The notes under the pieces were generated by a model, which did not search any database, was not told the origin of the DNA, and worked only from the letters and a program-made list of their open reading frames with translations. Positions 24,938 to 47,469 of a DNA stretch of 64,000 nt are shown here, in pieces. The position numbers and the translations under genes are program-made. The stretch is from Hemiscyllium ocellatum. Lineage: Eukaryota. The stretch is from positions 11,773,052 through 11,837,051 of the forward strand of contig NC_083409.1 of assembly GCF_020745735.1 (NCBI RefSeq), given 5' to 3'. How positions within the stretch are numbered: position 1 is the stretch's first letter; each line of letters begins with the position of its first letter.

Positions 24938-24953
24938 GCTGCCCTCTAGTGGC
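24938..24953 (-). promoter_or_regulatory. CTCF consensus site pointing back toward C1
   Basis: Reverse complement GCCACTAGAGGGCAGC matches the CCASYAGRKGGCRS core. Confidence 0.7.
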
Positions 24954-27669
24954 GAGAGAGCGCTTGCACGGCTGCTGAGGATTATGGGTAAAGTCCCCTT
25001 CCATTCGCGCCCACACAAACCAGCAGCCACTTCAGCTGCTTTATTGAAAACCACAAGCTTTCAAGGCGCTGTTCTTTCAACGGTGGAACTGGACGCACGG
25101 TCATACGAATTAGGGACAAATGAAGGAGATTCATCCTCTTCAGCCTGCTCCCCATGGCTGACCTGATTATTCACCTTCTTACCTTACTCTGACAGATTTT
25201 TGATCAGCAATGACTGTCTACTTCTTCACTACAAGCATTCAGAGGTTTCAATTTCAATTCCAAAGACCTATGACCTTTGCAAGAAATCAAAACCCTGCTC
25301 ATCTAGGTCTTAAATGAGGGAACTTATTTTAGTTTTATATTCTCCCTGAAAAGGAAGCATTCTTTTCACATCCACGCTGTATTCTATGCTCTTGTTGATA
25401 TGACATCTGCTTTAATCACCTGCTCTCCCATGAGAACAGCTGCCTATCCTGCCACCTTCAATGACTGATGCACAGAAACATCCAGGTCCTACTGCCCCTA
25501 CACCCATCCATACTTGTACCCTTTAGTTTGTTTTGTCTCTCCATGTTTTCCTTCCAAAATGAATCAGTGACATCTCTTTCTATTAAATTCTATCTGCGAC
25601 CATTTGTTCATTCCATTACCTATACCCTTTTTGAAGTTCGACACTATCTTTTTCATGAGTCGCAGTAGATCCAAGTTTCATACCATCAGCAAATTTTGAA
25701 ACCATGCCTTGTGCACTCAGATTTAAATATTTTAAATAATTTTAGAATGAACTATTTTATAAACTATTGTAAATTAAACCTCAAATTTATTGCCCATCTC
25801 TAGTTGCTTGGACTGAGTTCTGAGCCAGATCATGGGGCCGTTAAGAATGAATCGCGTCACTGTGTGGGACTGGAGTCACAGACCGGGTGATGACTGGGTT
25901 CCCTTGTCCAAACTACATTCATGAACATGACATTGAGTTTCCAGGGTTTTTTTGTTCAGATCCCAGCACCTTCCTTCCCAGATATTACATGGCTCACCAC
26001 TGCCCTCTCCAGGACAATTAGGGAAGTGCAACAAATAGCAGCCATTTTTGTGCCCGCCCATCCCAGGAGAAATCAAAATAAATGAGATACACTTCAAATG
26101 ATCAAACTGGTGAGGCTTGAATTCATCTCTTTGAAAAACTGGAGCCTAGGTGAGAAATACAGCCATGACATGGGTGACCCTGGTTTGTCAGACTGAAAGG
26201 TGGAGTGTCCTTTGGATTGACACTGGGATCAGACACAAAATGAATTACACTCAAAGACCGAACACACGGCTATCAAAGCGGGTCACCAAAGTGCAAAGAG
26301 CAGCAATTTATCTGGGAGACCTCAACAGGTATCAGTGGGTGTAAGTGCTTTCGGCAGGCAAGTGTCAGATATTGTAGAACACACCAGAAACACAGTCACA
26401 CAGAAAGGGAAGCTATTGGGATAGAGCAGGGAAACAGGAATAACTGAATTTCTCCACTGAGAGCTGGAAGAGGTTTTCTCGGTTGTAACTCCTCTGAGAA
26501 TGATAAAGCTTGAAGGGCTGTTTATTTTATAGACAATACTGCAGCGCGCAAGAAAGGATGGGGAGTGACAGATCTCCTCTAAATTGGAAACAATATCAGA
26601 AATAAAGGTCAATGTGATTTTGGATTGAATATTGAGAGTAAGGAGATGGAGGGGAGAGTGACCATGGCAGCTGTCCTGAAGAATGGTTAGGTCATGGCTA
26701 GAATGGTGCACAGTTAGAGGCTGCTTTGAGGGACAATACATAGTGGGACATGGACAGGGGATCTAGGGTCACCAGAGATGTGCAGGATAGCAAATGGAAA
26801 ATGCCATGGAAAATGCAGGATTACAGGGATAGGTCGGGTAGGTGTGGGTCGGGGTGGGGTGACCTTCAAAGGGTCTGTATGAGCTTGCTGGACTGTGTGG
26901 CCTGCTTCCACTCTGTAGGAATTCCTCGATTCTGTGATTCTATGAAGGCCAGAACAGGATCTCAACAGTGGAGGGAGGGTATTCTGATGTTCAAAAATTC
27001 TGAAACAAATAAACACAGTAAATGTAGATTTATCGTCAGTGCAGACAAACTGAAAGGCAAAATGACTTATTCTCCAGTCATATACCAGGTACAGAAAATA
27101 GATCAGGAAAAATATTTTGTTGCAATTATTGGAACTTAATGATGAATGATGATAAACAGAGTGCTCCATTCAAAAAAAGACAGAATTACTTTTTAGAATT
27201 TCAACAGGCCTGAAGCAAAAGAGGAAATCAGGATCAAATAGTCATTTGAGAATATAGTACTTGAGTGAGACAAAGCTCTTCTTGTGAAAGCATTTCATTT
27301 TGCCTTGCTTTCTCTCCATGGATGCTGCCTGACCCGCTGGGATCTCCAGAGTTTTGCTGTGCAATTTCTTACAAAATGTCTTGTTGTGTGCAAGACAAAA
27401 GCTTTGACAAAATGTCTCTTTTTTTTCAGCAACACTTGAATTTGGATCAGTTTGGAGAGAAAGCAGGGCCATGGAATCATCTTTCCCTGCAGGGAGGGAG
27501 GGAGTGTGTGTGGAATCTCCCATGGGCAGGGTTCTCCTGGCTGCCACCACATCAGGAAGGCTGGAGCTTGATGATCGAGCTGAATGGACAGGGCTCACTC
27601 TCACAGTCCTCAGGGCCATGGAGTCTCTTGTGATGGGAGCATCTGCTTGGTGTCAGGGCAGACAATGAC

Positions 27670-28490
27670 ATTGCAGTGGGATTGGAAATGGGACAACTCG
27701 ACAATGGATGCTGCACAATGGCTGCACTGCTTCTTCCCCTCTGCCTGATCCCTCCCCACACACAGGAGAAGTTGCATTAGGAACCTGTTCTAAAGGGCTA
27801 CAACCCACTGCAGCACTCCCAATCTGCAAAGAGAAGAACACTTCTACAAAGACTTTGCCAAGAACAGATATTCCCGCAACTTCATCCACAGATGCAAACA
27901 ACGCGATGAGGGTATGCCACGACCTAACTCACTAGCCACACTACCTTATATAAAAACATCACAGAACTCCAACCACTCATAAACTGCCCAGAAACTGACA
28001 GCCACGCTCAGACAACCCACGAGAACAAAAGGCCCATACCCACCGTGTGAAAGACAGATGTAATTTACAAGAATCCATGCAACGTTTGCACGAAACACCT
28101 CGGACAAACAGGCAGACAACTAGCCATGCACATCCATGAACACCAACGAGCCACTAAACCCCATGAGCAGCTGTCCCGAGTAGCTATACACACAGATGAC
28201 AAGGACCACAAATTCGACTGGGCCAACACTATGATCATAGGACAAGCTCAACAGAGGACAGCCAGAGAATTTCTAGAGGCATGACACTTATCCATGGGCT
28301 CCATCAATAAGCACATTGACCTAGACCCAGTATACCGACCACTGCAATGAACATCAGGAACCAATAACTGGAAACAGCAGGAATGGAACCAAATAAGTTC
28401 CAGAAGACACAGCACAACAGCACTTCACAGGAAGCTCCAAAGCTCTGAAGATGTCACCGAGACACGGGACAAAATGTTTACAAATCAACT
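27670..28490 (+). mobile_element. Penelope-like element 3' remnant (GIY-YIG)
   Basis: Translation near 28055-28290: TDVIYKNPCNVCTKHLGQTGRQLAMHIHEHQ...HKFDWANT..AREFLEA. Confidence 0.8.
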
Positions 28491-28899
28491 TCCCAGCTCA
28501 GTGGGCATACCCACAACTACAGCAAGGGGTGGGGGGGGGGGGGGTTCCTGTCCTACAGTGCTCTCCAAATCCTTACCTGCCATCTTCATAGTCAGATATT
28601 CATGCCCCTTACTACACATGGAATTGGACTGCCTGGTCCTGAGGCTTATAACATCCTTCTGGGACAAAGTCTCCAGGTATCTCTGCACCTCCCTGATGTG
28701 TCACCAATACTTTCAACTTAGCCTCCAGTCCAAACACTCTGTGTGGGAGTTGTTGTAGATTTATACATTCACTACAGATGTATTTAACCTGAGTCACTTT
28801 AACTCAATAAAGAAATGTTGATCCCATTTACAAATGAAAGATATCCATTCCTCTATTAAACCAGTAATTGTCTTCAGTATCTGAATTAAAGTTTTAGTG

Positions 28900-29600
28900 C
28901 TTTCCATTTATTGACCCTCCCGAATTGGGGTGTCCCGAAGCAGTACAAGATGACATGAGGATATAGATGGGCTGGGAGGGTCCGATGGGCTGATCAGTAA
29001 CAAGTGGAATTCTTTCAGATAAATGTGAGTCAGTGGACTGAGCTCCCCCTGACCATGTGAGTGAGGTGAGGGCAGAGTGACAGCACTTGACATCAAGGCC
29101 TGAGCAATGCAGCAGTTTTTCACCTGCTATTCCAGGGAAGGGATCAACATCGGGATCCCTCCGAGCAACTCCTGGGAATTCTGTCATCCCAAAGGGACAC
29201 GTCCTCCTCTTCAGTTCCCACAACCAGCAGCAAGTCAGCCACACACTGTGCAAACTGTTTGGGGGAGCTGACCTGAACTCTCACAGCCCTGTGCCACTCT
29301 CTGCTGGAAGATGGAGAGACTATTGGGGAACCCTTGGCACAGGCAGCTCCATCAATATTGTTGGTCTTTAAATGTGAAGGTGAACTTGTCCTGGTCCTCA
29401 GCCTTCCCTGACCCGATATGGACCAGAACATGTTCAAAATGACCAACTGTGTAATGACCCACTGCCAGTCCGACAGCAATGAGCCAATCTGCTCTGAACA
29501 CTCCCTGAGTGAGCTCACTCCATTATGTTCAGATACACTGCCATTGAGTGCCCAGGGAGCCCACCCTTCCACTCTCTGGTTTTGATAGCCCTCCCATCAC
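28900..29600 (-). mobile_element. Decayed endogenous retrovirus pol (RT) fragment
   Basis: With two frameshifts: LVILNMFWSI/EDQDKFTFTFKDQQY*WSCLCQGFPNSLSIFQQ/QCVADLLL, matching retroviral RT motifs LD..xxFWSI, FAFT..QY.W..LPQGF.NSP..F and QYVDDLLL. Confidence 0.7.
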
Positions 29601-30135
29601 AGAGACCCCCAGGAACCCCTTCAGTTCGTTCTCCACTGGAGGGGGCTGGTCTCAGTGGTTTTGATGGATGCATCTGTGGGTGAGATATAATGATATATAA
29701 CTCAATATGTTCCCTATTCCCCACCCACACACGTATGGACACAAGCTCTTCTCCATTCATCAGGCACAGGTATTCAGGATGGGTACTGCCCCTTCAGAGC
29801 ACCCCCATGGTGGATGGAGGGTTATGGAGTGAAAGGTACCCTCCCCACTCTGGGTTTGGACCTTCCCCATCTACACTCTGAGTTCAGCTCACTCTCAACA
29901 TGATTCTTCGTTCTTTCTAAACTCCAACATACCTTCCTTCTTTACTCCATTTATTGGGGATGATTTTCTCAGGGCCCTGCATTCCTGCTGAAAGTGCCCC
30001 TTCTGTCCCTAACTGTAGTAATGCCCTCCTGCTCCCGGGACCCCATTGCCCTCTCTATTCTCCCCCTCGTGTTCCGTGCCTTGAGGGTGAAGGTTAACAC
30101 TTCACACACCCTTTCCCTGAGGCTTCAGCTCGGGC

Positions 30136-31140
30136 CATTTCCAAAGCACACACAGAGACAGAGACTGAATCTTCTTCATCTTTATTCCCTTTTCCAGATT
30201 GACATTGACAGAAAACAGACTGCAATTAACAGCCCAGACAGAGGAAGCTGCTCAAATTCACAGCCACAATGGAGCTTGAGGAAAACACTTGTGGAGATTT
30301 TCTCAATAACCTGAGAATCCTGTCCCTTTAAACAGTGACTAAACCTTAAATTGGAACTGGCGGCTGAGCAGGAAGGAGATCTGGTTTACTGAAGCAGAGA
30401 CTTCTGAGGTTCACATTGTTTTTATACAGCTCACAGTTTTCAATCTTTGAAAGGTTATGCTTGTTATTACAACTCAACACTGTCCCCAACAAACAGTCTC
30501 CTGGACAGGGACAGAATAGGGTCAGATACAGAGTAAAGCTCTTTCCGTACTGTTCCCACCAAAACACCCAGGACAGGGACAGGATAAGAAACAGAATAAA
30601 GCTGTCTCCACACTGTCCTCGTCAAACACTCCCAGGACAGGGACAGCACTGTTTGGGTACAGAGTGAAGCTCTCTCTACAGTGTCACAGTCACAGTAACC
30701 TGCGTTAACCCCTGAACCTCAGAGTCTCCCAGAGGCCAGTCTCAAGAAGGAAGAGAGTTGAAATTCAGTGCTGACAATGACCTTTGTCCTGCCAGCTCAG
30801 CCCTGTTCTATTTAAAGTTGTGTCTCCTCTGTGGACTGTCTCAAACACACTACACACATTCTGATCTCCTGGTGCTCTTGCTGAGGGGAGAGGGGAGGGT
30901 CACGTGGGTGAGGACACAGGAGAATGAGCGTTGGACCGCAGAAGTATCAGTTTGAATATTTGTATCGGATACCTAACAAACCCGATGTTTTTTAAATTCC
31001 TTTTTGATTGTGGACATTGAAGTCCCCCACCCAGAGTACAGTCTGTGCCCTCACTACCCTCAGAGCTTCCTCCAAGTGCTGTTCAACATGGAGGAGAGAC
31101 TGACTCATCAGCCGAGGGCGGACAGAACATGGTCATCACC
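30136..31140 (-). pseudogene. IGKC: Ckappa remnant C2: 3' UTR with AATAAA (30181-30186), last ~87 nt of exon (30850-30936) and a piece of upstream intron
   Basis: Reverse complement encodes ..FSCVLTHVTLPSPLSKSTRRSECV*; it is joined directly to intron sequence homologous to 44262 onward, so the acceptor and most of the exon are missing. Confidence 0.9.
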
Positions 31141-31439
31141 AGAGGTTTCACAGAATCAGAGAATCATACAGTGTAGAAGAGGTCCCTCATCTGATCATGT
31201 CTGTCCCACCAAGGCAAAACTAAAGCTACTCTCCATCAGCTTTCCAGAACTGGGTCCAAAGCATTGAATGTTCGGATATTTCAGGTGCCCATCCAGGTTT
31301 TTTTTAAAAGGTATATTTGTTAAATATTGACCAGGACACCATGGGGATCTGCTCTGCTCTTCTAATAGTGTCATGGCATCTTCTACTGCCCCCTGAGAGG
31401 GCAGACATCAGAACATCCCATCTGAAAGATAGTCTTTGA

Positions 31440-31712
31440 GCACTGAACCTCTGACAGTGTTGCACTCCCTCAGTATTGACACACCAGCAGTGCAGCACTC
31501 CCTCAGCATGAAATATCTGATAGTGCAGCACTCTCACGGTACTGACTTTCTGACAGTGCGGCATTCCCTCAGTACGAACCCTCTGACAGTGTGGCACTGT
31601 CTCAGTACTGACCTTCTGACAGTGCAGCACTCCCTCAGTACTGACCCATCATTAGGGCAACATTCCCTCAGTACTGACCCTCTGACAGTGCTGCACTCCC
31701 TCAGCGCTGCAC
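31440..31712. repeat. 33-bp tandem repeat, ~8-9 degenerate units
   Basis: Unit CACTCCCTCAGTACTGACCCTCTGACAGTGCAG; starts at 31628, 31661 and 31694 are 33 nt apart. Confidence 0.85.
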
Positions 31713-34689
31713 TGCACTCTCGGCCTTGACAATTTGCTTCAGTGATAGAATCACGTAATGATGGAATCTGTACAATGTTGAAGCAGGCCATTCACCCCAA
31801 TGAGTTCACACCAATCCTCCGAAGAGCATCCCACCCAGATCTAAACCACTGCACTATCCCTGCAACCTGCATTTCCCAATGGCTCATCCACCCAGTCTGC
31901 TACATTGTGAGTGTGAGGGGAGAGTGCTCCCCACTGAGACCAGGTTGATACCTCCCAGTCCAATGGCCTGCCTTGCTTCCCAATCCCAGCCCAAACTTGG
32001 AGGAATGAGACCACCTGGGGAGGCTCGAGATGTTTCCCAGCCAGAGATAGTGCCTTCAGGAGAGAGATGGTGAACAGATGATAGGGGCAGCGGGCAGGGG
32101 GGTCTGTTGTCTTGAGGTGGGGTGTAGGACACATTGAAGCAGGCGATGGCAGGTGCTGAACCCTTTCCCCAGAAAGAGTTTGTAAGTTGATGGGTGAAAG
32201 TAGCGGGGGGGGGGGGCACTAGAGTAATCTTTTGTTGCTGCTGAAACTCTTGCTGCCTGCTCAGTCACGTCTGAGAGACACACAGACACATCAGACACAC
32301 AGGAGGCAGCTTTCTGTGGATGTTCTCCTGGGGCAGGTCTCATCAATCATGGAGCTATGGTCAGTAACAGTGTAAGCTGTGCGGCCCTGAAAGCCTGAGT
32401 CTGCAACTCAGCTCAGAAGGACATCAGCTCATTCGTCAAACCTGGTTCTGTCCCTCTGCAGCCTAGCCGGTCTGCCTGTGCCTTTTCACCACTCCCAGGT
32501 TTTCCCTTGTGTTACAGCTCATTCTCCTGAGGGACAGCTGTACTAAGGCCCAGTGGAGTGGACTCGATGGGCCGAATGGCCTTACTTCCACTCCAAGTCT
32601 CATGATCTTGTTACTCTGTCAGATCCTCAGCAAGAAACTCATGGCTAACCATCGCCCTCTCCAGGATAGTTAGGGAAGGACAATAAATAGCAGACACGTC
32701 AATGCTCTCCCCATCCCAGGAGTAATCAACATAACTGATGGACAATTCAAACAATCAAACTGATGGAAGGTGGTTAACTCAGTCCAGTGATTAAACTTCA
32801 CCTGGTAATTCCTGTATTAAGTTCAAGGTGAAACTATCCTGGTCTCTGCTGAATTTAGATCAATTTTCATTGTTAACTTAATACATTTCCATCTTCATTC
32901 TTTCTCTCCAAACTGATCCCAATTTGAATGTTGCGAAAAACAAAACATTTTGTTGAAGTTTTTTGTCTTGCATTCATCAGGAGAATTTACAAGAAATGCC
33001 ACAGCAAAGGAAAACAATATTTAAACTGGCGTGTTCATAGTGACAACATCTCAACCTATCAGCGCTTTCCTCATATGCAATATCAATGTCATGTTTTTCT
33101 CCTTTGATTGGTACTTTTACAATTATCCTGATGAAGGCAAAATGAAAAGCTGCCAAACACTGGGCATTTTTCAGGCCAGTTCAATATTCTCAAATGACTA
33201 TTTGATCCTAATTTGCTCTTTTGCTTCAGACCTGTTCAAATTCCAAGAAGTAATTCTGTCCCATTTTGAATGGAGGACCCAGTTTACCAGAACTTACTAA
33301 ATTCCAATCTCTGCATCAAAATATTTTTCCTGATCTCCTTCCTGTACCTGGTGAATGACCAGAGAATGTGTCATTTTGCCTTTCTATTTGTCAGTATTGA
33401 CAGTAAATCTACATTTACTGTGTCGATTTCATAAAGAAGTTTTGTTATCAGAATACCATCCCTCCCCCCCTCGAGATCCTATTCTGGTGTTTCCCTGTAA
33501 CCTGGATCCCCTGTCCCTGGACCATTCTGCAATGCCCCTCAATGAAGCTCCTAACTGTACACCATATCCCAGATGTGACCTAACCATTCTTCAGTACAGC
33601 TGTCCTGGCCACTCTCTCCTTACTCTCAATATTCATTCCAAAATCCTGCTGGCTTCACCCATTTTTTTTTTCTGATTTTCTTTCCCAATTTTAAGTATTT
33701 ATGTTGCTCAACATCCTTTCTTGCCCACTGCTGTACATTGTTTACAATATGAGCTGCATTTCATCCTTTAACGTTCTGAGTCATTACAACCAGGAAAGCT
33801 GTCAACAGAAAAAATCAATTAATCCCATTGCCCTGCTCTATCCCAACAGCTTCAATGTATTTATGGTGCATTCAATGGCATCTGACACTTGTCTGTCTTA
33901 CCCTCTTACACCCACTAATGGCTTTCTCTTGTGTTCTTCCTGACAAATTGCTGTTTATTGCAGTTTGGTGACACACTTTGGTAGCCGTTTGTTCGGTCTT
34001 TGAGTGTAACTCATTTTGTGCCTGATCCGTAGGGGACTCCACCTTGCAATTTAAAAATGCAGGCTCACCCATATCATGGCCGATGCTCCAGTCTTTAAAA
34101 GCGATGAGTTCAAGCCTCACCAGTTTAATCATTTGAATTGTATGTCATTTATTTTCATTTCTCCTGGGACAGGGCAAGCTTTGATTTGTCTGCTATTTGT
34201 TGTCCTTCCCTAATTGTCCTGGAGAGGGCAGTGGTGAGCAATGTCAAATCTGGAACATAAAACATTACAGCGCAGTACAGGCCCTTTAACCCTCTGTGTT
34301 GCACCGACCTGGGGAACTATTCTCTTCTTCCGCCTGGGAACCCTCCAACCACAAGGGATGAACTCAGATTTCTCCAGTTTCCTCATTTCCCCTCCCCCCA
34401 CCTTGTCTCAGTCGATTCCCTCGAACTCAGCACCACCCTCCTAACCTGCAATCTTCTTCCTGACCTCTCCGTCCCCACCCCACTCCGGCCTATCACCCTC
34501 ACCTTGACCTCCTTCCACCTATCACATCTCCATCGCCCGTCCCCCAAGTCCCTCCTCCCTACCTTTTATCTTAGCCTGCCTGGCACACTCTCCTCATTCC
34601 TGATGAAGGGCTCTGGCCCGAAACGTCGAATTTCCTGTTCCTTGGATGCTGCCTAGCCTGCTGTGCTTTAACCAGCAACACATTTTCAG

Positions 34690-37100
34690 AACTATTCTGA
34701 AGCCCATCTATCCTACACTATTCCATTTTTATCCATATGTTTATCCCGTGACCATTTAATTGCCTTTAGTGTTGGCGAGTCTGCTACTGTTGCAGGCTGT
34801 GCATTCCATGCCCCTACTAGTCTCTGAGTAAAGAAACTACTTCTGACATCTCTCCTATATCTATCACCCCTCAATTTAAACCTATGTCCTCTCAGCATCT
34901 GAGGGAAAAGGCTCTCATTGTCCACCCTATATAACCTTGTGATTATCTTAGTATATCGCAATTAAGACAACTCTCAACCTTCTTCTCTCTAACAAAAACA
35001 GCCACAAGTCCCCCATCCTTTCCTCATAACGCCTTCCCTCCATGCCAGGCAACATCCTAGTATATTTCCTCTGAATTCTTAAATTCCCACATCCTTTTTT
35101 TAATGCGGTGACCACAACTGAATGAAATACTCCAATTGTGGCCACACCAGAGTTTTGTACAGCTGCAACATGATCTCATGGCTCCTAAATCCAATCTCTC
35201 TACCAATAAAAGTTAACCCACCATAAGCCTTCTTAACCACCCTATCAAACTGGATGGCAACTTTCAAGGATCTGTGTACATGGACACTGAGATCTCTCTG
35301 CTCATCTACACTACTAAGCACCTTACCATTAGCCCAGTGCTCTTTATTCCTATTGCTCCTTTCAAAGTGAATCACCTCACATTTTTCTGCATTAAACTCT
35401 GCATTTCCCACCTCTCAGCCCAGCTCTGCAGCTTATCCATGTCTCTGTGTAACCTGCAATATCCTTCAGCACTATCCACAACTCCACAAACCTCAGAGTC
35501 ATCCGCAAATTTATTCACCCATCCTTCTATGCCCTCATTCAGGTAATTTATAAAAATGACAAACAGCAGTGGTCCCAAAAGAAATGTTTGCGTTACACCA
35601 CTAGTAACTAAACTCCAGGATGAACATTATCCATCAATAACCATGTTCTGTCTTCTTTCAGCTAGCCAACTTCTGATAAAACCGCTAAATCACCCTCAAT
35701 CCCATGCCTCTGTATTTTGTGCAATAGTCTATCGTGGGGAACTTTATCCAATGCCTTACTGAAGTGCATATCCACCACATCAACCGCTTTACCCTCATGC
35801 ACCTGTTTGGTCACCTTCTCAAAGAACCCAATAAGGTTTGTGAGACCCGATCTACCGTGTTGACTATCCCTAATCAATTTATTCCTTTCTAGATGATTAT
35901 AAATCCTATCTCTGCTAACCTTTTCCAACATTTTACCCACAACTGAAGTAAGGCTCACTGGTCTATAATTACCAGGGTTGTCTCTACTCCACTTCTTAAA
36001 CAAGGGGACAACATTTGCTATCCTCCAGTCTTCTGGCACTATTCCTATAGACAATGACAACATAAAGATCAAAGGTAAGGTCTCTGTAACCTCCTGGCTT
36101 CCCAGAGAATCCCAGGATAAATCCCACCCAGCCCAGGGGACTTATCTATTTTCACACTTTCCAGAATTGCTAGTACCTCCTCCTTGTGAATGTCAATCCT
36201 GTCAGTCTAGTAGCCTGTATCCCAGTATTCTCCTTGACAACGTTGTCTTTTTCCAGTGTGAATACTGAAGAAAAATATTCATTAGCACTTCCCCATCTCT
36301 TTGCACTCCACGTACAACTTTCTACTACTCTCTTTGATTGGCCCTAATCTTTCTCCAGTCATTCTTTTATTCCTGATATACCTATACAAAGCTTTCGCAT
36401 TATCCTTAATCCTATCCACCAACAACATCTCATGTCCCTTCCTGGCTTCCTAGCTCTCTCTTTTGGTCTTTCCTAGCTAACTTGTAACTCTCAAGCACCC
36501 AAACTGAGCCTTCAGGTCTCATCCTCACATAACCTCCTTCTTCCTCTTGACAAAAGATTCAACTTCTTTCGTAAACCACAGCTCCCTCGCTCGGCCACTT
36601 GCTTCCTGCTTGACAGGTGCATACTTATCAAAGACATGCAGTCGCTGTTCCTTGAATAAGGTCCACATTTCAGTTGTGCCCATCCCCTGCAGTTTCCTTC
36701 CCCGATCCTATTCATCCTAAATCTTGCCTAATCGTATCATAGTAGCCTGACTCCACCAATAACCTTTGCCCTGCAGTATATATCTATCTCTTTCCATTGG
36801 TCTGGTAAACAAAACCAAATTGTGGTCACTATCATCAAAGTGCTCACCTACCTCCAAATCTAATAACTGGCCAGTTTCATTAACCAGCACCAAACCCAAC
36901 GTGGCGTTCCCATTCTGGGAAGGAAGGTGCTGGGATGGGTACAAACAAAAACCATGAAACTCAATGTCATGTTCACAAATGTTCTTTAGGCAAGGGATCC
37001 CAGTCATCACCCGGTCTGTGACCCCAGTCCCACAGTGACATGATTCATTCTTAACGGCCCTATGACCATCCTCAGTAAAGAACTCAGTCCGAGCAGCTGG
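34690..37100 (-). mobile_element. CR1 LINE ORF2 remnant
   Basis: IVPEDWRIANVVPLFKK..PGNYRPVSLTSVVGKMLE..SQHG..DFSKALDKVPH (35662..36072); GPLLFVIFIN..KFADD (35372..35578). Confidence 0.9.
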
Positions 37101-37867
37101 AGATGGCAATAAACATGAGGCTTGTCAATTACATTAATGCCCCGAGAAGGAATAATGCAGCTCTTTGCTGTCTGCCTTTGAGCCTCTGGTCCACCACACT
37201 CTCGCTGTCATGGGTCTCTAATCCTCTCACATTAATTCATTAGATGATGGCAATATGTGGGCGGCACGGTGGCACAGTATTCAATTCCCACCTCAGGCTA
37301 CTCTCTGTGTGGAGTTTGCACATTCTCCCCGTGTCTGCGTGGGTTTCCTCCGGGTGCTCTGGTTTCCTCCCACAATCCAAAAATGTGCAGGTTAGGTGAA
37401 TTGGCCACGCTAAATTGCCCATAGTGTTAGGCGTGGATTTGTTGGGCCGAAGGGCCTGTTTCCACACTGTAAGTAATCTAAAAAAAATGCGTTGAGCTTT
37501 TACTTTGAACTGTCAGGTCTCTTTTCCCATGCCTCTCTCCTCCCACCTCCTTCCAAGCCTTTCACCATATGTTTCCTGTGACAGCCTTGCTGTGCAGAGT
37601 GAAAGCTCTCTGTGTTCTCTGAGCCCTTGCTCTGTCTTGTGTCTGTCTACTCTCCAATGTTCATTTACTCAGGAAGGTAAGTGTTACAGAATTAAGTGGG
37701 AATATGTTCCAGGTCAGCCATGGCCTGACTGACTGACTGGGGAACCAGGCCGAAACAACTGATAATTCATTCCCACTGGAATCCACCGGAATGGCTGCAG
37801 TTTCGTTCAGATGCTCAATGCCCGGGACTTGACGCGTGGTTCTCAGCAGCGGTACCAGCACTCTATA

Positions 37868-37883
37868 GCCACTAGAGGGCAGC
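37868..37883 (+). promoter_or_regulatory. CTCF consensus site pointing back toward C3
   Basis: GCCACTAGAGGGCAGC, identical core to 24938-24953. Confidence 0.7.
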
Positions 37884-38222
37884 TGTTTCACTGTCCCTGA
37901 ACAGAACAAATGAACTGGGGCCCTGCTCGGGTCTAACCGGTTCAATCTGGAGAAATGAGGAGAGAGAGAGGGGGGGGGGGGGGTGGAAAAGCTTCTGAAC
38001 CAGGATATTTATCCCACCCCAATGAAATGTCCTCTGTGATTTGTTTGTCTTCAAAGTGTGTTTTTTTATTCATTCTCTGATACACATAGACAATGTCAGT
38101 ACTGAGTGGGACAAAGTATATTTCCTCCTCCAACCCCTTTCCAACACACCCTCTCCATCTTGTTTTACTCCTTATTGCCTCTTCTACAATTGTCCCTGTT
38201 CCCTCACTCCGCTCCGGTCCCT

Positions 38223-38349
38223 GAGGGATTGATGGCCGGAGTTCATGACCCCGCACTGTGTGAAGGTTGGTGTGAAGTGAGGCCAGTGTGTTGGAGCTTG
38301 GGCTCCTGCCTCAGGCCCAGGTGTAGGGGCCTGTTCAACAATCTGCACA
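38223..38349 (-). promoter_or_regulatory. 127-bp invariant element, copy 2
   Basis: Identical to copies 1 and 3. Confidence 0.55.
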
Positions 38350-41300
38350 ATGTTTTCGTTTTTCTTTCTGATCACAGACATTTTAATATTGCTTAACAAA
38401 CTAAAGATGGAAATATGTCAGTGCCGGGATTATTTAACATCTTGGTCCTAGTTGTTAATGGACCCTCACGCGTGATAACACAGTTTTCAATGTTTCTCTC
38501 CCCTTACGTGTTACGAAGAGCTTTGCAAACATGTTTTGATGAGGACAGTGTGTCTTCAACACCATGTAACGGAGTGGGTGGGTTTATGAATTCTCATCCC
38601 ACTACGTCCACTTTCAAGGAAAATTACCTCCACTGACCCATTTCTTTGGCCGCCATTTGCAGCAAAAGCAAATCTCTCCCTTTGCCAGCACAAAGAGAAA
38701 GTGCCTGTCAGATTCCCTCGTGTGTGATGGATTAGCCCAATAGGAGCAGCACTGGTAGATCATGCTGTATCAGCCTGGACAGAAACCTGGGCAACCTCCA
38801 AATGAAAGGATGACCTTCAGTAGATCTACTGCCACATGAAATATGGAATTGGAATCCTTGTTCCCGAATCACCTCATCAAAGCCAAATACAACTGAGAAA
38901 ATATAAACCAAACCAACTTCCCAAGGTCATTCATCAGAACATAACAAGAAATTGGTTAACAGACAGTTACTGTCTCCTTTCTCTGGAGAGTGTCACTGTA
39001 ACTGTCCCCTCTCTCTCAGGGGAGTGTAGTTGTTCCTCTCCCCTCCCTCTTTGGGGCCATGCCATTTTGAGCATCCTTTCTGTCTGAGGATGTGACTGTT
39101 CCTGTCCCCCAACTCTCTCAGCATCAGGGAGGGGCTTGACAGCACCTGGTTTGTTAATTCCATTTACTTTCTTGTGAAATGGGTAATCCCTGCTTCACTA
39201 TACTGACCCGTGTGTCAATACCCGGTACAGCTCACCCTCCATCTCAATCAGATCACAGGGTCTAAGGTTGGTCAGTACTGTCTGGCCCCAGAACAATAAC
39301 ACTGACTGACTGGAGACAACCCAGATCAAGTCCCAATAAGAGTGTTATTGACCTTCACACTCAAAGCCCACCGAGAAGGTGGTCATCAGTCTCTAATGTT
39401 GTCGCAGTGTAATGTTTCCCAGAGAAGTAGGAGTCAGTCTAGATTTTAAACAAGGGAGGGATGTTGTGAGGAGACAGATGGGAAGGCATGGAGAGGAAAC
39501 AAAAAGGAGAGAGAATTGTATTTCTGTTACACCATTCATGAGCTCATGATGTTCAATGCTGTTTACAGTCAATGGAATACTTCTGATGTGGAGACAATGT
39601 TGTAATGTGGGGAATGCATCAGCCCATTTACTCTCAGCAGGCTCCCACAATAACAGCGAGCTATTGACCAGGACATTGGGGCTAGGACACGGAGCAGAGA
39701 ATGGAAGAGGCTGGAAAATAAAACCCAAGCAGTCAGTGAGGCCTGAGTATTGGCTGGGTAGGAGGGAGATGGCAAAGCAAAGGGGCTTCTTAAAATTCAT
39801 TCATGAGATGTGGGCATCACTGGTTTTGCTGGCATTTTATACCCATCTCTAGCTGCACTGTGAAGGTGGTGGTGCACTGCCTTCTTGAACTGCTGCAGTC
39901 CATGTACTGTAGAAAGACCCACAATGCTCTTTGGGAGGGATTTCCAGATTTTTTTTCCCAGTGACAGTGAAGGAATAATGATATATTTCCAAGTCAGGGC
40001 GGTGAGTGACCGGAAGGGGATGTTTCAGGGTGTGATGTCCTTATATGTCTGTTGCCCCTATTCTTTGAGATGGAACTATTGGTGGGTTTGGAAGGTGCTA
40101 TCTCAAGGAAGATTGGTGAGCTGGTGGTGATGGTACAGCTGGCTGAAAATGATCACCTCTCCACAGCCAGTGGTCACTCCCTTTCCTTTTATATCAGTGA
40201 AACCTGTCAATAAATGACTTCTAGTCAGTAATAGCAACAATAACAATTTGTATTGACATAACATCTTTAATGTAGGAACCATCCAAAAGTTGGGCACATA
40301 TAGTGTTTTTGCTGATGACCAAAAGAAGACAAAGAACTCGTTTGAAGAAGTGAGAGGGGTTTGTGGAGGAAATCCCCGTGCTGAGGGCCTGGGAGACTGA
40401 AGGCACAGCTGCCAGTCATGAGGTGGAAGGCCAGACTGGAGGGTTTGGGAGATGGGGGAGGGATTGAGGATAACCGAGTGGTCCATTATATCACCGCCCC
40501 ACCTGCTGCAGCAGGAGACTGGGGAGAGGAATTGGGAGGAGAAAGTGAGGTCTGCAGATGCTGGAGATCAGAGCTGAAAATGTGTTGCTGAAAAAGCGCA
40601 GCAGGTCAGGCAGCATCCAAGGAACAGGAGATTCGACATTTCGGGCATAAGCCCTTCCTCAGGAAGAAGGGCTTATGCCCGAAATGTCGAATCTCCTGTT
40701 CCTTGGATACAGAGAGGAATCAGGAGGCTGGGCAAGGCACCACCCAGAGGCTGGAGGCTGCTACTGCAGGCAGTCTCCAAACCAGTTCTCTCTGAGGGAA
40801 TGGCACTGGAGCACACAAGACCATGGGAAATAAGAGCAGGAGGAGGAATCCAATGCCAGTTAATGCTTTCGTAAGTACAGGGACCAAAACTGCACACAGT
40901 ACTCCACGTGCAGACTCACGAACACCTTGTACAGTTATAACAAGGTTTCTCTACTTTAACATTCCAAGCCAAGCAATAAAGGCCTCAATTCCATTCACCT
41001 TCTCAATGACTTGCTGCACCTGCACTAACTTTTTGTGTTTCTTGCAGAAAAACACCCAGATCCCTCTGCACTGCACTTTGCTAGAATCTCTCACCATTTA
41101 AATAATAATCTGTATTTTGATTATGCCTACTGAAGTGCATGACCTTCCACTTTCTGTCTTTAAACTCCACCTACTGTGTATTAGTGTCTCATTTCTAGTT
41201 TGGTCTTCTCTATGTGATTGTCCGTCTCTGTGCATCTGCCCGTACCATGTCCCATTCCCATTTGCTTACGGACCAGAGACTTGGGTGTCCAGCCCTTTCC

Positions 41301-41475
41301 TGCTGGTTCCATTCAATATTGAACAGCTTCCTCGAGACAACGTAGCCCAGCATGTCATCCCCTCCTTCAACTGGGATTTTCCTTGCTGTCCTGTGGTGGC
41401 ACATTCAAGGCTCGGAGAGTTACTTCATGACTCGGTCCCAGACTCTGTGACAGGGGGAGGGGGTGGGAACAGAGG

Positions 41476-41871
41476 GAGATCCAGGCTGCATGACTGGGGA
41501 GTAAGGGGGAGCCCCAGGGTCCAGGCTCCGTGACTGCGGAGTGAGGTGGAGACTCAGGCCCAGGGTCCGTGACTGGGGAGTGAGGTGGAGACCCAAGGCC
41601 TAGGCTCCGTGACTGGGGAGTGAGGGGAGACCCAGAGCCCATGCTCCATGACTGGGGAGTGAGGGGGAGACCCAGGGCCCAGGCTCTGTGACTGGGGAGT
41701 GAGGTGGAGACCCAGGGCCCAGGCTCCATGACTGGGGAGTGAGGTGGAGACCCAGGGCCCAGGCTCCGTGACTGGGGAGTGAGGTGGAGACCCAGGGCCC
41801 AGGCTCCGTGACTGGGGAGTGAGGGGGAGACCCAGGGCCCAGGCTCCGTGACTGGGGAGTGAGGTGGAGAC
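41476..41871. repeat. 40-bp G-rich minisatellite, ~10 units
   Basis: Unit GAGGTGGAGACCCAGGGCCCAGGCTCCGTGACTGGGGAGT. Confidence 0.95.
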
Positions 41872-43129
41872 TGCTAGATGATGGTGGGCTGTGAGAAACA
41901 AATGACAGTCGGCAACTGGAGGCCTTCACTGCTTTTCAAAATTAGTCCTAAGGCAAGTTTTCCACTCATCTCAGAGGGCTGGTGTTTCGACAGGGTTAAT
42001 GGCTTATCCAAAAGTCTGTCCGTGTGAGAAAGCAGGATTCCCCTTCCTGTGTACATCACAATGTTAAAGCACAACACCATTCCCAAATCTCTGGCACAGT
42101 CCTTGAAACTACATCATTTTGGTTGGAAGCAGAGAGCACAGGCTGGTCATGCTGTGTACCCCATCAGAAAGACCTGTGTGTGATCAGTTATACTGTATGG
42201 TATGCTCACAGACTGGGTGGCTAGGAGCTGGGCAATTGAATACAGCTCCATCTCCTGAGCAGGATGTGCTCCCCCTCCCCTCCACCATCTCCAGCTGGCT
42301 GAGATTGGGAAAGAGGATCCGAGTGTCCGATTGTACTGTCCGCAAGCTTGTATGTCAGCCAAGTGGATCGAACAGAATATGAATTCCCTGATTGGGGTGG
42401 ATAATCTGATCCAATCAGGGAGATATGGCTGACAGAAATAAACAGAGCCACACATCAAATGACACCAGGTTATAGTCCAACAGATTTTTTTTGAAATTCT
42501 TCACATGACTAAGGAGCAGCAACCTGATTTCAAATAAACTTGGTGAACTATAACCTGGTGTTGTGTGAATTCTGACTTGTCCACCGCAGTCCGACACCAC
42601 ATCAGAAAGAAACAGGAGTGTCAGACATCCTGTTTGCTCTGAGAGCTGCCTCTGAAGGAGCTGGGTCAGTGTCAAGGACCCTCCACATGACGGGCTACTG
42701 GCCTCTGTGCAGGTGTTACAGTAACAGTGGGACCCACACTGACAGACACACACCTACAGACAGCATTGAATGACAGTCACACCCACACTGACCAACATAC
42801 CAACAGACAGTTTTGGGTAAATGTCACACCCATAAGGGGCATGTATGTCATGAGATCCTGACTGATGCTCTCTCTGAACTAAGACCTCACTCAGTTCAGT
42901 TTTGAGCTGTCGCTGTGAGGAACAGGGTCAGGTGGGAGAAGTGAACGTCACGACTGCAGCGTCCAGCATCTGTGACTGGCCTAAGTTTGTTTCAGGTGTT
43001 ACCCAGCAGCAGAGAGGGCACAGTGCGATCACACCAGCTGAGTCTGGACCAACAGTTTGAAGAGGGAATGTCTCAGACTGTAATGATTCAGCCCCAGCAG
43101 CTTTCAGTTTCTGTTTTGTTTGGAATCTA

Positions 43130-43300
43130 GTAAACTCAACAGATTCCCAAACAAAGGGATCACTTGGAAATGATTGATGATTGGCTGTCAGTCCAAATTT
43201 CAGCCAATGTGTCATTCATTGACAGGTCAAGCAGTCAATCATGACAATCATTTGCTGACATTCTGCCAATCACCTGAGGGGGCGGTGGGACATTTCCAAA
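43130..43300. promoter_or_regulatory. CCAAT/PBX-motif block 3' of C3, with GC box
   Basis: TGATTGGCTG 43178-43187, CAGCCAAT 43201-43208, TCATTGACAG 43216-43225, CTGCCAATCA 43263-43272, GGGGCGG ~43279. Confidence 0.45.
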
Positions 43301-43331
43301 GCACTCACAAGACAGAGACTGAATCTTCATG

Positions 43332-43337
43332 TTTATT
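43332..43337 (-). terminator. Polyadenylation signal of C3
   Basis: TTTATT at the position homologous to the C1 AATAAA. Confidence 0.65.
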
Positions 43338-43860
43338 CCCTTTCCCAAGTTGTCATCAACAGAAAAAACTGTAATTAACAGCCCAGACAGAGGAAGTTGT
43401 ACACGTTCATAGTCACAATGGAGGCTGAGGAAAACACTTGCGGAGATTTTCTCAATAACATGAGAATCCTGTCCCTTTAAACAGTGACAAAACCTTAAAT
43501 TGGAACTGGCGGCTGAGCAGGAAGGAGATCTGGTTTACTGAAACAGAGACTTCTGAGGTTCACATTGTTTTGTACAACTGACAGTCTTCAGCAACTTCAA
43601 ATGATTTTACGTGGCATCACATGTAATCCCTGTCCTCATCAAACACTCACTGGTCAAGGACAGCGACGTTTAGATTCAGATTAAAGCTCCTTCTCCACTG
43701 TCCCAATGAACTGGCGTGAGCCCTGAACCTCAGAAGTGTCTCTGAGCCAGTCCTGAGAAGGAAGAGAGTTGAAATTCAGTGCTGACAATGACCTTTGTCC
43801 TGCCAGCTCAGCCCTGTTCTATTTAAAGTTGTGTCTCCTCTGTGGACTGTCTCCAACACT

Positions 43861-44191
43861 CTACACACATTCTGATCTCCTGATGCTCTTGCTGAGGGGA
43901 GAGGGGAGGGTCACGTGGGTGAGGGCACAGGAGAAGTGAGCGTTGGCCTCCCAGTCAGACCCAGAGAGGGTCAGCAGGCTGCTGACACTGTAGGTGCTGT
44001 CCGCAGCTCGCAGGTAGTTGCTGGTCTGAACCCCGTCGAAATGACTGCACCGTCCTTCTTCCACTGCACCTCCAGCTCATCGGGATAGAAGTGATTGGCA
44101 AGGCACACCAGGGTGGCAGTGCCCTTGGCATTGACCTGCTCTGGGGAGGGGGGGGGGCAGCAGGGTCAGCTTGGGCTGAGAGTTCTCATGG
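43861..44191 (-). pseudogene. IGKC: Ckappa copy C3, full length but frameshifted as assembled
   Basis: About 10 substitutions versus C4, plus three indels: one G missing after the acceptor, CCTCCC changed to C10 (44148-44157), and TCGGAC changed to TCGAC (~44037). Confidence 0.85.
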
Positions 44192-46860
44192 CTGAAAGAC
44201 AAAAGAACCAATTTTAGTCCCTGCCATTTGGCAGGATTTTCAACTCTCCAAACATTAACTAGCAGAACTAGTAGTTTGAACATTTGTATCCAATACAGAA
44301 CAAACCTAACAAAAGAATGGCCGTTTGTTAAAATTCCTTTTTGCTGGTGCAGTTTGAAGTCCCCCACCCAGTGTACACTCTGTGTTCAACGTGGCCGAGA
44401 GACTGATTCATCAGCCGAGGGAGAACAGTACATGGTAATCAGCGGGAGAATTCATAGAATCATACAGAATAGAAGAGGCCCTTCGCCCCATCAGGTCTAT
44501 GTCACCAACGCAACACTAAATCAACACAACACCCACATTCCAGAAGTGGGCCCATAATCCTAAATGTTCAGTCATTTCAGGTGCTCATCCAAGTACTTTG
44601 TGGAGGTTGTGAGGTTTCCCACCTCAACTCTCCTCCCAGGCATTCCCGACCCCCACCCTCTGTGAAAAAGCGTTTCCTCAAATCCCCTCTAAAGCTGCTG
44701 CCTTTCACATTGAATGTGAGCCAACTTGTTCTTGACCCTCCCAGTCAGGGGTACAGCTATTTACTATCACCCTGTCTATTCCCCTCATAACCTTGTCCCC
44801 CTCCATCAGGATCCCCCCCACTCCCCAAACCTTCTCTGCTCCAAAGAAAACAGCAGGAGCTTATTCATCCTCTTCACATCTGAAATGTTCCATCCCTGGG
44901 AACATTCTGGTGAATCTCCTCTGCACCCCCTCTAGTGTAATCACATCCCTCCTGCAGTGCGGAGACTACAACTGCACACAATGCTCCAGCTATGGCCTAA
45001 CTACTGTTCTGTATTGCTCTAACATATCCTCCATGCTCTTTTAGTCTCCACCTAAAATGATTAAGGCAAGTACCCCCCGATCACCTTCATAACTGCCATG
45101 TTAGCATTTTACATCTTCAAAAGTGCATCACCTCACATTTATCTGGTTTAAATTCCATCTGCCTCAGATCTGCCCATCTGACCAATCTGGTTATATCCTG
45201 CTGTAACTGAAAACCTTCTTCTTCACTGTCAACCACCCGACCAATCTTCACATCAAGCACAAACCCAGTTATTATCCACCTCCACATTCCCTTCGGCATT
45301 GTTCCTGTATATCACGAGCAATGTGGGACCCAACACTGATCCCTGTGATATCCCACTGCACCCTGGACCCAGTCACACAAACAGCCTTCTAGCATCACCT
45401 TCTGTCACCTGTCACAAAGCCAAGTTTGGATCCAACTTGCCAAGTTACCCTGGGTCCCATAGCCGTGTATATCTTCTTTATCAGTCTCCCAAGTACAACC
45501 TTGTCAAAGGCCTTACTGAAATTCATATAAACCTCCTGCACCTCCCTCATCCACACAACTGGTCACCTTCTCGACAAAATTCCAAAAGATTTGTTGGGCA
45601 TGGCCTCCCTCTGACAAAGCCGCGCTGACTACCCCAATATGGAGATTCATTCGACCTTCAGAATTTTCTCCAATTGTATCCCTACCGCTGATGAGACACC
45701 CACTGGTTTCCTTGTCCATATCTGGCCTGATGCCATGTGACCTCATCAGGCCTGGGGTCAATGTTGAGGATTTCCAGGGGTCACTCCCTCCTGGCTCTAT
45801 ATCACTGTGCCATCACCTCTGCTGAGTCTTTCCTGCTGGTGGGACAGGACCTACACAAGGGATGGTGAAGGTGGTGCCTGGGACACTGTTCGGTATAATT
45901 ATGTGAGTATGACTGTGTCAGGCTGTTGCTTGTCAGTCTAGTCTGTGAGACAGCTCTCCTGAATTTGACACTAGCCCGCAGATATTAGTAAGGAGGATGC
46001 AACAGGGTCGACAGGGCTGTGTTTGATGTTGTTTCCGGTGCCAAGGTCGAGGCCAGGTGGCCCATCAGGTTTCATTCTGTTTCTGAGACTTCCCAGCGAT
46101 TGTTAGAATGGAGGGCCTTGCTCGGCCATTACAGAAGGTGGTTAACAGTTAACCTCATTGCTGTGGGTCTGGAGTCACGTGTAGGCCAGACAAGGTAAGG
46201 ACGGCAGATTTCCTTCCCGAAAGGACATCGGTCCTTCGTCTCAATATCTCTTTAACATAACCCTGATCACTCACAGATCAGAACTACTTTATCCGAGAAC
46301 ATTGGAGCAGACTTGAATCAACGCACTTCAGGAAGGAGTCACGTTGGAAGAGCAACAAACAAGGATGGAGATGGAGACGTGGAGCTTCAAATACTGATCT
46401 TTGTACTTTGGTGGCACGCTTTGATGGCTGTTTGTTAGATCTTTGCGTATATTTTTTTTGCTGATCCCACTGCTAATCCGAAGGACACTCCACCCTTCAG
46501 TCTGACAAACCAGATTCACCACCTTGCAGTCTGACAAACCAGGTTCACCCATTTCAAGGCTCTGTTTCTGGGCAAGGCTCCAGTCTTTCAAAGAGATGAA
46601 TTCAAGCCTCACCAGTTTGATCATTTGAATTGTATGCCATTTATTTTGATTTCTCCTGGGATGGGGTGGGCGTTGACGTGTCGGTTATTTGTTGCTCTTC
46701 CCGAATTGTCCTGGAGATGGCGATGGTGAACCATGTAATATCTGGGAAGCAACTGACAGGTCATTCCCACTGGAATCCACTGGAATGACTGCAGGTTTGT
46801 TTGTGGCTAATGGAAGGAGGCATTACCCATAATCCTCAGCAGCAGTGCAAGTACTCTATA

Positions 46861-46876
46861 GTTACTGGAAGGCAGC
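46861..46876 (+). promoter_or_regulatory. Degenerate homolog of the CTCF site
   Basis: GTTACTGGAAGGCAGC, 4 mismatches to GCCACTAGAGGGCAGC, in the same flanking context (CTCTATA...TGTTTCACTGT) as 37868. Confidence 0.6.
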
Positions 46877-47342: not shown

Positions 47343-47469
47343 GAGGGATTGATGGCCGGAGTTCATGACCCCGCACTGTGTGAAGGTTGGTGTGAAGTGA
47401 GGCCAGTGTGTTGGAGCTTGGGCTCCTGCCTCAGGCCCAGGTGTAGGGGCCTGTTCAACAATCTGCACA
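47343..47469 (-). promoter_or_regulatory. 127-bp invariant element, copy 3
   Basis: Identical to copies 1 and 2. Confidence 0.55.

What the first reader, a model, noticed from the sequence alone, without database searches (positions are those of the whole stretch)
24938..37883. Inward-pointing CTCF sites closing each cluster, forming a divergent pair between tail-to-tail clusters
Seen: the perfect core GCCACTAGAGGGCAGC on - at 24938-24953 and on + at 37868-37883, each ~320-340 bp distal to the 127-bp element and each oriented toward its own C gene; site 1 has a TGCA upstream at roughly the spacing of the CTCF upstream motif. Established: divergent CTCF pairs mark loop-domain boundaries, mammalian Ig loci end in 3' CTCF anchors, and shark Ig clusters rearrange within, not between, clusters. 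Inference: enhancer + anchor cassettes duplicated with each minilocus give every cluster its own loop-extrusion/RAG domain, a possible mechanism for cluster autonomy. I found no convergent partner upstream of the V within this window.
Basis: partly seen in the sequence, partly recalled or inferred. Interest (0 to 1): 0.78.

Follow-up and report, generated by a model that had tools for sequence, protein, structure and literature searches.

The report
CTCF-type motif behind shark kappa genes
Two identical, strong binding motifs for the genome-folding protein CTCF do sit back to back behind shark antibody light-chain genes. They are two copies of one ancestral site carried on an inverted duplication. 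One of them belongs to a dead gene copy, a third copy has decayed, and nothing yet shows that CTCF binds.

Summary
GCCACTAGAGGGCAGC lies at 24938-24953 (-) and 37868-37883 (+), and these are the two best CTCF-matrix hits in the window (19.8 bits, p about 1.2e-7). Each lies 321 or 339 bp beyond an exact copy of the 127-bp element and points toward its own C exon.

The two sites are not independent. They are paralogous positions on a large inverted duplication (about 16.5-27.5 kb against 44.3-32.9 kb).

The window holds three kappa tails:
- A is intact, with a germline-joined VJ and a C exon.
- B has no V, and its C exon carries three indels, so it is a pseudogene.
- C has an intact C exon, but its copy of the motif has 4 of 16 bases changed and scores -1.2 bits.

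Evidence for constraint is moderate. In the diverged zone (A-B identity 69%) the only perfect A-B run of 16 bp or more is the one on the motif.

No convergent partner lies 5' of any V examined. Four other cartilaginous-fish light-chain clusters had no CTCF hit of 13 bits or more; in one of them the DNA stops short of the homologous position. A RAG-scanning role cannot apply to cluster A, because its VJ is already joined.

Best reading: an ancestral, probably CTCF-bound 3' boundary site of one kappa cassette subfamily, not a device of every cluster. This scan has noted the same motif behind kappa cassettes elsewhere in this genome.

The parts
24938..24953 (-). CTCF-type core, copy A (matrix window 24937-24955), 19.8 bits, pointing toward cluster A
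37868..37883 (+). CTCF-type core, copy B (matrix window 37866-37884), 19.8 bits, pointing toward pseudo-cluster B and cluster C
46861..46876 (+). Decayed paralogous copy in the tail of cluster C (GTTACTGGAAGGCAGC). It has 4 of 16 bases changed, scores -1.2 bits, and lies next to a SINE-like insertion of about 130 bp.
24490..24616 (+). 127-bp invariant element, copy A (landmark, 321 bp from the motif)
38223..38349 (-). 127-bp invariant element, copy B (339 bp from the motif)
47343..47469 (-). 127-bp invariant element, copy C (466 bp from the decayed motif)
25998..26016 (-). Secondary, weaker CTCF-like motif (15.6 bits) inside a block of about 130 bp that looks repeat-derived. It has the same orientation as the main site. 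Its paralogues are at 34215-34233 (+, 15.6 bits), 46707-46725 (+, 13.4 bits) and 32650-32668 (-, 12.7 bits).
4646..5214 (+). Cluster A leader and germline-joined VJ exon (VJ exon 4879-5214), intact, with a splice donor after J
16656..16949 (+). Cluster A kappa-type C exon, intact
43864..44141 (-). Copy B C exon, a pseudogene with indels of -1, +4 and -1. No V lies upstream. Homology to A begins inside the J-C intron, near 46.35 kb.
63573..63863 (-). Cluster C C exon, intact (97% amino-acid identity to A). Its VJ lies beyond the window end.
30132..30936 (-). Fragment D in the spacer between the inverted arms: the last 24 codons of a C exon plus the 3' UTR
16471..27476 (+). Left arm of the inverted duplication (C exon plus tail of cluster A)
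32887..44343 (-). Right arm of the inverted duplication (copy B), interrupted at about 34.25-36.9 kb by a retroelement fragment (an RVT_1 ORF at 35662-36072)

Best explanation
The two motifs are copies of one ancestral CTCF-type site. That site belongs to the 3' tail of one subfamily of kappa (type III / NS4-like) light-chain cassettes. It sits about 0.3 kb beyond the invariant 127-bp candidate control element and 6-8 kb behind the C exon. An inverted duplication of the C exon plus its tail placed the two copies back to back. Inferred, not shown: CTCF binds the intact copies with its cohesin-blocking side toward the gene. This would stop cohesin and enhancer activity coming from the cassette, so the site would act as a 3' boundary or enhancer blocker rather than as a RAG-scanning anchor. 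The site is not needed by every cassette. It has decayed in cluster C, whose side of the junction is still faced by the intact site of the dead copy B downstream of it.
For: Motif strength: 19.8 bits, the two top hits in the window, p 1.24e-7, 0.016 expected per 64 kb. The sites are paralogous within a collinear duplicated unit. Constraint signal: each lineage has changed about 13% of sites in the distal tail, yet A and B have 0 changes in the 16-bp core. In the zone where A-B identity is 69%, the single perfect A-B run of 16 bp or more is the 18-bp run on the motif; 0.69^16 is about 0.003 for a pre-specified place. A is overall closer to C than to B (88.6% against 83.6%, and 89% against 82%), so the shared motif is ancestral and not a recent A-B novelty. 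Each site points toward its own C exon. CTCF motifs pointing into domains, and divergent pairs at insulation minima, are documented in skate (PMC10115646). Mouse Igh ends in 3' CTCF-binding elements (PMC10293834). No known RNA family or protein domain overlaps the sites. Unchecked earlier notes of this scan report the same motif behind other kappa cassettes of this genome.
Against: Copy C, behind an intact C exon, lost the motif at a rate consistent with neutral drift: 4 of 16 changed against a 13% background, binomial tail about 0.14 (my arithmetic). Copy B keeps the motif although its gene is dead. The mosaic identity pattern suggests gene conversion, which could also preserve an 18-bp patch. 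No forward-facing partner lies 5' of V. Other light-chain clusters have no strong motif.
Confidence: 0.5

Rival explanations
1. Hitch-hiking chance motif. A CTCF-like 16-mer arose by chance in an ancestral kappa tail and was copied with the cassette. It survives where duplication or gene conversion is recent and has no function.
For: The two hits are one event, not two. About 1,200 hits of this strength are expected by chance in a genome of about 4.7 Gb (the genome size is my assumption). The copy behind an intact C exon has decayed, while the copy behind a dead one is kept. Mosaic identity suggests conversion. There is no convergent partner.
Against: A hit of this strength is expected 0.016 times per 64 kb. 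It coincides with the only long perfect A-B run in a 69%-identical zone. It sits a fixed ~0.3 kb from an invariant element and always faces the gene. In mammals, most motifs this strong are occupied (general knowledge, not tested here).
Confidence: 0.3
2. Every Ig minilocus has an enhancer plus an inward CTCF anchor that pairs with a convergent site 5' of V, forming a private loop-extrusion and RAG-scanning domain that explains rearrangement within a cluster.
For: The sites point inward and sit next to the 127-bp element. Mouse Igh shows the principle (PMC10293834).
Against: Cluster A is germline-joined, so RAG has nothing to scan there. An unchecked note says the same of cluster C. No convergent partner was found in 4.6, 10 or 14.5 kb 5' of three V genes. 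The motif is dead in one of three tails here and absent from L001, L003 and L004. One of the two 'clusters' is a pseudogene without a V.
Confidence: 0.1
3. The conserved patch is a binding site for another factor, and its likeness to a CTCF site is incidental. One candidate is an E-protein on the CAGCTG that overlaps the 3' end of the motif and survives in all three copies, as part of an extended 3' enhancer.
For: CAGCTGCC is identical in A, B and C, even though the CTCF core is broken in C.
Against: Six bases kept in three copies is not significant. The A-B perfect run covers the whole CTCF core, not only the E-box. All the high-information CTCF positions are matched.
Confidence: 0.07

Closest known systems
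3' CTCF-binding elements (3' CBEs, 'super-anchor') of the mouse Igh locus
   Same: CTCF motifs lie downstream of the constant region and its 3' control elements and are oriented toward the locus. A weaker second motif in the same orientation lies about 0.15-3.6 kb further out in all three tails.
   Different: Mouse has about ten sites with proven occupancy, which pair with convergent V-side CBEs and bound RAG scanning across megabases (PMC10293834). Here there is one strong motif per cassette of 20 kb or less, no convergent partner was found, the genes are pre-joined, and binding is untested.
Enhancer-blocking CTCF insulators (chicken beta-globin 5'HS4 type) and divergent CTCF pairs at TAD boundaries
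   Same: A strong core motif sits between a candidate enhancer and neighbouring genes. Back-to-back divergent sites, as at insulation minima, have also been seen in skate (PMC10115646).
   Different: The divergent geometry here is a by-product of an inverted duplication. The spacer between the sites holds only gene debris and retroelement pieces. No insulation has been measured.
Mouse Igk CTCF elements (Cer, Sis) in the V-J interval
   Same: They are CTCF elements regulating a kappa locus.
   Different: Those lie between V and J and shape V usage during rearrangement. The shark site is 3' of C in a cassette that does not rearrange.
Retroelement-borne CTCF sites (for example mouse B2 SINE)
   Same: The motif has been multiplied by copying of the DNA that carries it. 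The secondary 15.6-bit motif lies in a block that looks repeat-derived.
   Different: The main motif is not inside a dispersed repeat. Within the window its flanks occur only in the three kappa tails.

Membership tests
CTCF-binding element (CBE) | Strong match to the vertebrate CTCF core motif | tested here: met
   19.8 of 27 bits, p 1.24e-7, top two hits in the window.
CTCF-binding element (CBE) | CTCF occupancy in vivo (ChIP, CUT&Tag or footprint) | not testable with these tools
CTCF-binding element (CBE) | Purifying selection on the core across copies or species | tested here: inconclusive
   A and B have 0 of 16 core bases changed in a zone of 69% identity, and this is the only perfect run of 16 bp or more. 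C has 4 of 16 changed. Orthologous tails from other sharks could not be fetched.
Loop anchor obeying the convergent rule | Motif points into the domain it closes | tested here: met
   The - site faces cluster A and the + site faces copy B and cluster C.
Loop anchor obeying the convergent rule | A convergent partner at the other end (5' of V) | tested here: not met
   No + hit of 9 bits or more lies in the 4.6 kb 5' of the cluster A leader. The only + hit inside the cluster is 14.4 bits, in a repeat in the J-C intron. There is none of 13 bits or more 5' of V in L001 or L002. Sequence further upstream was not available.
Ig-locus 3' CBE array | Several sites in the same orientation downstream of the 3' enhancer(s) | tested here: inconclusive
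   There is one strong site plus one weaker, repeat-like motif in the same orientation in each of the three tails. The enhancer status of the 127-bp element is untested.
Ig-locus 3' CBE array | Bounds RAG scanning or V(D)J recombination | tested here: not met
   Cluster A has a germline-joined VJ with no RSS to scan.
   Of the two tails behind intact C exons in the window, one has the motif and one does not. L001, L003 and L004 lack any hit of 13 bits or more within 9-26 kb 3' of C. The sample is small.

The most novel reading that the evidence does not exclude
The 127-bp element plus the inward CTCF site form a portable 'enhancer and boundary' module of one kappa cassette subfamily. Only the outermost cassette facing an orientation switch needs to keep the boundary. 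Here the site of dead copy B serves the intact cluster C, whose own site decayed after the tandem duplication. If so, this would be a cartilaginous-fish counterpart, and possibly a forerunner, of tetrapod Ig 3' CBEs. It would act on transcription and on which cluster is expressed, not on RAG scanning.
Probability: 0.15. Interest if true: 0.7.

Novelty: new member of a known kind. Interest (0 to 1): 0.4.

Why it matters
How sharks keep some hundreds of near-identical antibody miniloci transcriptionally and recombinationally independent is an open question. A CTCF boundary attached to the cassette would give a concrete, testable mechanism and would push Ig 3' CTCF elements back to the base of jawed vertebrates. 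My full-text search found no paper on CTCF in shark Ig clusters. The present evidence, however, shows a subfamily-specific motif that is kept in some copies and lost in others. This fits a dispensable boundary element or a passenger, not a universal device. The value of the finding is mainly as a precise target for ChIP, Micro-C and a genome-wide census.

Tried and rejected

2. Other clusters and species through the look-up of encoding contigs. Chromosome-level assemblies of Chiloscyllium punctatum, Hemiscyllium ocellatum and Cetorhinus maximus, and the fragmented S. torazame assembly, returned no DNA. One protein was not on record. Only four loci were obtained. L002, the only one from the same subfamily, ends about 1.6 kb short of the position homologous to the 127-bp element and about 2 kb short of the motif.

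3. A protein search with the C exon alone found only three short proteins, two of them contaminants in bacterial assemblies.

4. A metagenome scan for a 25-mer of the 127-bp element found no match.

5. A search of earlier findings by sequence was blank.

6. Coding or RNA explanations for the conserved patch. Pfam found nothing on the overlapping ORFs and Rfam found nothing in 23.5-39 kb.

7. The idea that the main motif is SINE-borne. Its flanks occur only in the three kappa tails. SINE-like pieces lie beside the motif, not over it.

8. The bamboo-shark paper PMC7932699 as evidence for CTCF-marked open chromatin in sharks. Its ATAC-seq data are from mouse, so I did not use it.

9. The 40-bp tandem array at 41.5-41.9 kb as a CTCF array. 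It has no matrix hit of 9 bits or more.
Full report
OBSERVATION

The 16-mer GCCACTAGAGGGCAGC occurs exactly twice in the window, at 24938-24953 on the minus strand and 37868-37883 on the plus strand. No further match appears with up to two mismatches, and shuffles expect 0.03 matches (sequence read).

I scored the window with a CTCF count matrix typed from my memory of JASPAR MA0139.1, so the numbers are approximate. Both sites score 19.8 of a possible 27 bits and are the two best hits in the window. Exact enumeration of the score distribution gives p = 1.24e-7 per position. That is 0.016 hits expected per 64 kb on both strands.

Exact copies of the 127-bp element lie at 24490-24616 (+), 38223-38349 (-) and 47343-47469 (-).

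By the usual convention, a forward CCACNAG...GGCAG motif is a left anchor. The plus-strand site therefore faces rightward, toward the C exon at 43.9-44.1 kb. The minus-strand site faces leftward, toward the C exon at 16.66-16.95 kb. The pair is divergent.

WHAT THE LOCUS IS

The window holds kappa-type (type III / NS4-like) light-chain genes of a bamboo-shark-like genome. The best protein matches are Chiloscyllium punctatum, Heterodontus and nurse shark kappa chains.

- **Cluster A (plus strand).** It has a leader at 4646, an in-frame germline-joined VJ exon at 4879-5214 followed by a GTAAGT donor, and an intact C exon at 16656-16949. Its tail can be followed to about 27.5 kb.
- **Cluster C (minus strand).** It has an intact C exon at 63573-63863, 97% identical in protein to A. 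Its tail is collinear with A's tail down to 46394.
- **Copy B (minus strand).** It lies directly downstream of C's tail. Homology to A starts inside the J-C intron near 46.35 kb, and no V lies upstream. Its C exon at 43864-44141 carries three indels of -1, +4 and -1, so it is a pseudogene.
- **Fragment D (30132-30936, minus strand).** It holds the last 24 codons of a C exon plus the 3' UTR.

A and B form the arms of an inverted duplication, 16471-27476 against 44343-32887, around a 5.4-kb spacer that contains D. B's arm is interrupted at about 34.25-36.9 kb by a retroelement fragment that has a reverse-transcriptase ORF.

THE TWO MOTIFS ARE ONE ANCESTRAL SITE

A three-way alignment of the tails puts the motif at the same column in A and B. 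The third copy, in C's tail at 46861-46876, reads GTTACTGGAAGGCAGC. Four of its 16 bases are changed, including matrix positions 4, 5 and 9, and it scores -1.2 bits. A SINE-like insertion of about 130 bp lies beside it.

The back-to-back geometry is therefore a consequence of the inverted duplication. The statistical weight is that of one 19.8-bit hit, not two.

Over most of the unit, A is closer to C than to B: 88.6% against 83.6% around the C exon, and 89% against 82% around the element. The motif shared by A and B is therefore ancestral, and C lost it.

IS THERE CONSTRAINT?

In the diverged part of the tail, each lineage has private changes at about 12-14% of sites. In the 16-bp core, A has 0 changes, B has 0 and C has 4.

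In the zone where A-B identity is only 69%, the single perfect A-B run of 16 bp or more is the 18-bp run lying on the motif. For a place fixed in advance by the matrix, 0.69^16 is about 0.003. This is a moderate signal of constraint in two lineages.

Two things weaken it. First, the pairwise identities switch in a mosaic way along the alignment, which suggests gene conversion, and conversion could also preserve a patch. Second, C's four changes are within neutral expectation (binomial tail about 0.14 at a 13% rate, my arithmetic).

The 'TGCA upstream motif' claimed for site 1 is a 4-mer. Copy C shares it, but copy B has GTACCAGC in its place. I do not count it as evidence.

OTHER MOTIFS AND PARTNERS

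A weaker CTCF-like motif lies further out in all three tails, in the same orientation as the main site: 25998 (-) at 15.6 bits, 34215 (+) at 15.6 bits and 46707 (+) at 13.4 bits. A fourth copy lies at 32650 (-). All sit inside a conserved block of about 130 bp that looks repeat-derived.

No plus-strand hit of 9 bits or more lies in the 4.6 kb upstream of cluster A's leader. The only forward hit inside the cluster, at 15230 with 14.4 bits, lies in a repeat in the J-C intron.

OTHER CLUSTERS

Chromosome-level shark assemblies could not be read, and neither could the fragmented S. torazame assembly. Four loci were obtained:

| Locus | What it is |
|---|---|
| L001 | Compact kappa-like cluster of C. 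punctatum |
| L002 | Same subfamily as the window; its DNA stops about 2 kb before the position homologous to the motif |
| L003 | Another light-chain isotype of C. punctatum |
| L004 | Tandem lambda-like clusters of elephant shark |

None has a CTCF hit of 13 bits or more anywhere; the best is 12.3 bits. L001 and L002 have nothing of 13 bits or more in the 10 and 14.5 kb 5' of V, although L002 has gaps there. The strong 3' motif is thus a feature of one kappa subfamily, not of cartilaginous-fish light-chain clusters in general.

Earlier notes of this scan say the same motif lies behind other kappa cassettes of this genome, in roughly a third of them, and that another such pair also sits on an inverted duplication. 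I could not test these notes and they are leads only. They do mean that the scan has found this before on other DNA.

MECHANISM

*Established background.* In skate, CTCF motifs inside open chromatin are enriched at TAD boundaries, point into the domains, and tend to be divergent at insulation minima (PMC10115646). Mouse Igh ends in 3' CTCF-binding elements that help bound RAG scanning (PMC10293834). Germline-joined NS4 genes are known in nurse shark and are expressed mainly early in life (PMC2193156).

*Inference.* The intact copies are probably bound by CTCF. From general knowledge, motifs of this strength mostly are. Their cohesin-blocking side would face the cassette. They would therefore confine cohesin and the activity of the neighbouring 127-bp element to the gene side. 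This is a 3' boundary or enhancer blocker.

It cannot be a RAG-scanning boundary for cluster A, which has nothing left to join.

The pattern 'dead site behind intact cluster C, intact site behind dead copy B' fits a boundary needed only once per same-orientation run, at the end facing the junction. It fits neutral decay of a passenger equally well.

My odds are:
- about 0.5 for a real CTCF boundary of a cassette subfamily;
- about 0.3 for a passenger motif;
- under 0.1 for another factor, for example on the CAGCTG that is kept in all three copies.

COMPARISON AND NOVELTY

The element would work like an Ig 3' CBE or a classical enhancer-blocking insulator. Membership as a CBE is met for motif strength and orientation. 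It is inconclusive for conservation, and occupancy could not be tested. The convergent-partner and RAG-scanning features are not met.

A full-text search found no paper on CTCF in shark Ig clusters. If real, this is a new member of a known kind. Interest is moderate. The target is clear and testable, but it is subfamily-specific, dispensable in at least one intact cluster, has no binding evidence, and has been seen elsewhere in this scan.

LIMITS

- The matrix came from memory.
- The sample of other clusters is small, and none of them reaches the homologous tail position.

Noticed in passing
window 41481-41871: A tandem array of 40-bp units, 9.8 copies at 90% match, lies in the tail of pseudo-copy B. 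It has no CTCF-matrix hit of 9 bits or more, so it is not a CTCF array here. I saw no counterpart in cluster A's tail.
   Followed up: partly
window 31439-31705: A 33/66/99-bp tandem repeat array lies in the spacer between the inverted arms, just upstream of fragment D.
   Followed up: no
window 14157-14175 (-) and 49827-49845 (-): Two further CTCF-like hits of 17.0 and 16.4 bits. The first is in cluster A's J-C intron, in the same orientation as the 3' site. The second is in a C-specific insert of cluster C's tail and is convergent with the 37.87-kb site, so the two flank the dead copy B. Counting paralogues once, the window has four independent hits of 15 bits or more, against 0.74 expected.
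   Followed up: partly
window 46877-47010 and 25040-25100: Pieces of a SINE-like shark repeat (recognised from memory, not checked against a repeat library) lie next to the decayed motif in C and about 90 bp distal to the intact motif in A. The tails are frequent insertion targets.
   Followed up: no
proteins P0001 and P0002: Proteins filed under Aeromonas veronii and Salmonella enterica are 85% and 81% identical to this shark kappa C region and carry V-set or C1-set domains. They sit on contigs of 507 and 990 bp and are almost certainly shark contamination in bacterial assemblies.
   Followed up: no
window 4530-4590: Cluster A has a one-mismatch octamer (ATTTACAT) and a TATAAAG box about 110 and 60 bp upstream of the leader ATG. 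The perfect octamer occurs only twice in the window, both times away from V.
   Followed up: partly
window 6000-14000: The 11.4-kb J-C intron of cluster A has a strong negative GC skew (-0.29 to -0.36) and an internal duplication (6430-7022 against 13421-14025, 71% identical).
   Followed up: no
window 47572-48533 and 35013-36072: Retroelement fragments (an RVT_1 ORF at 35662-36072, with related sequence at 47720-48228) are inserted independently in the tails of B and C.
   Followed up: partly
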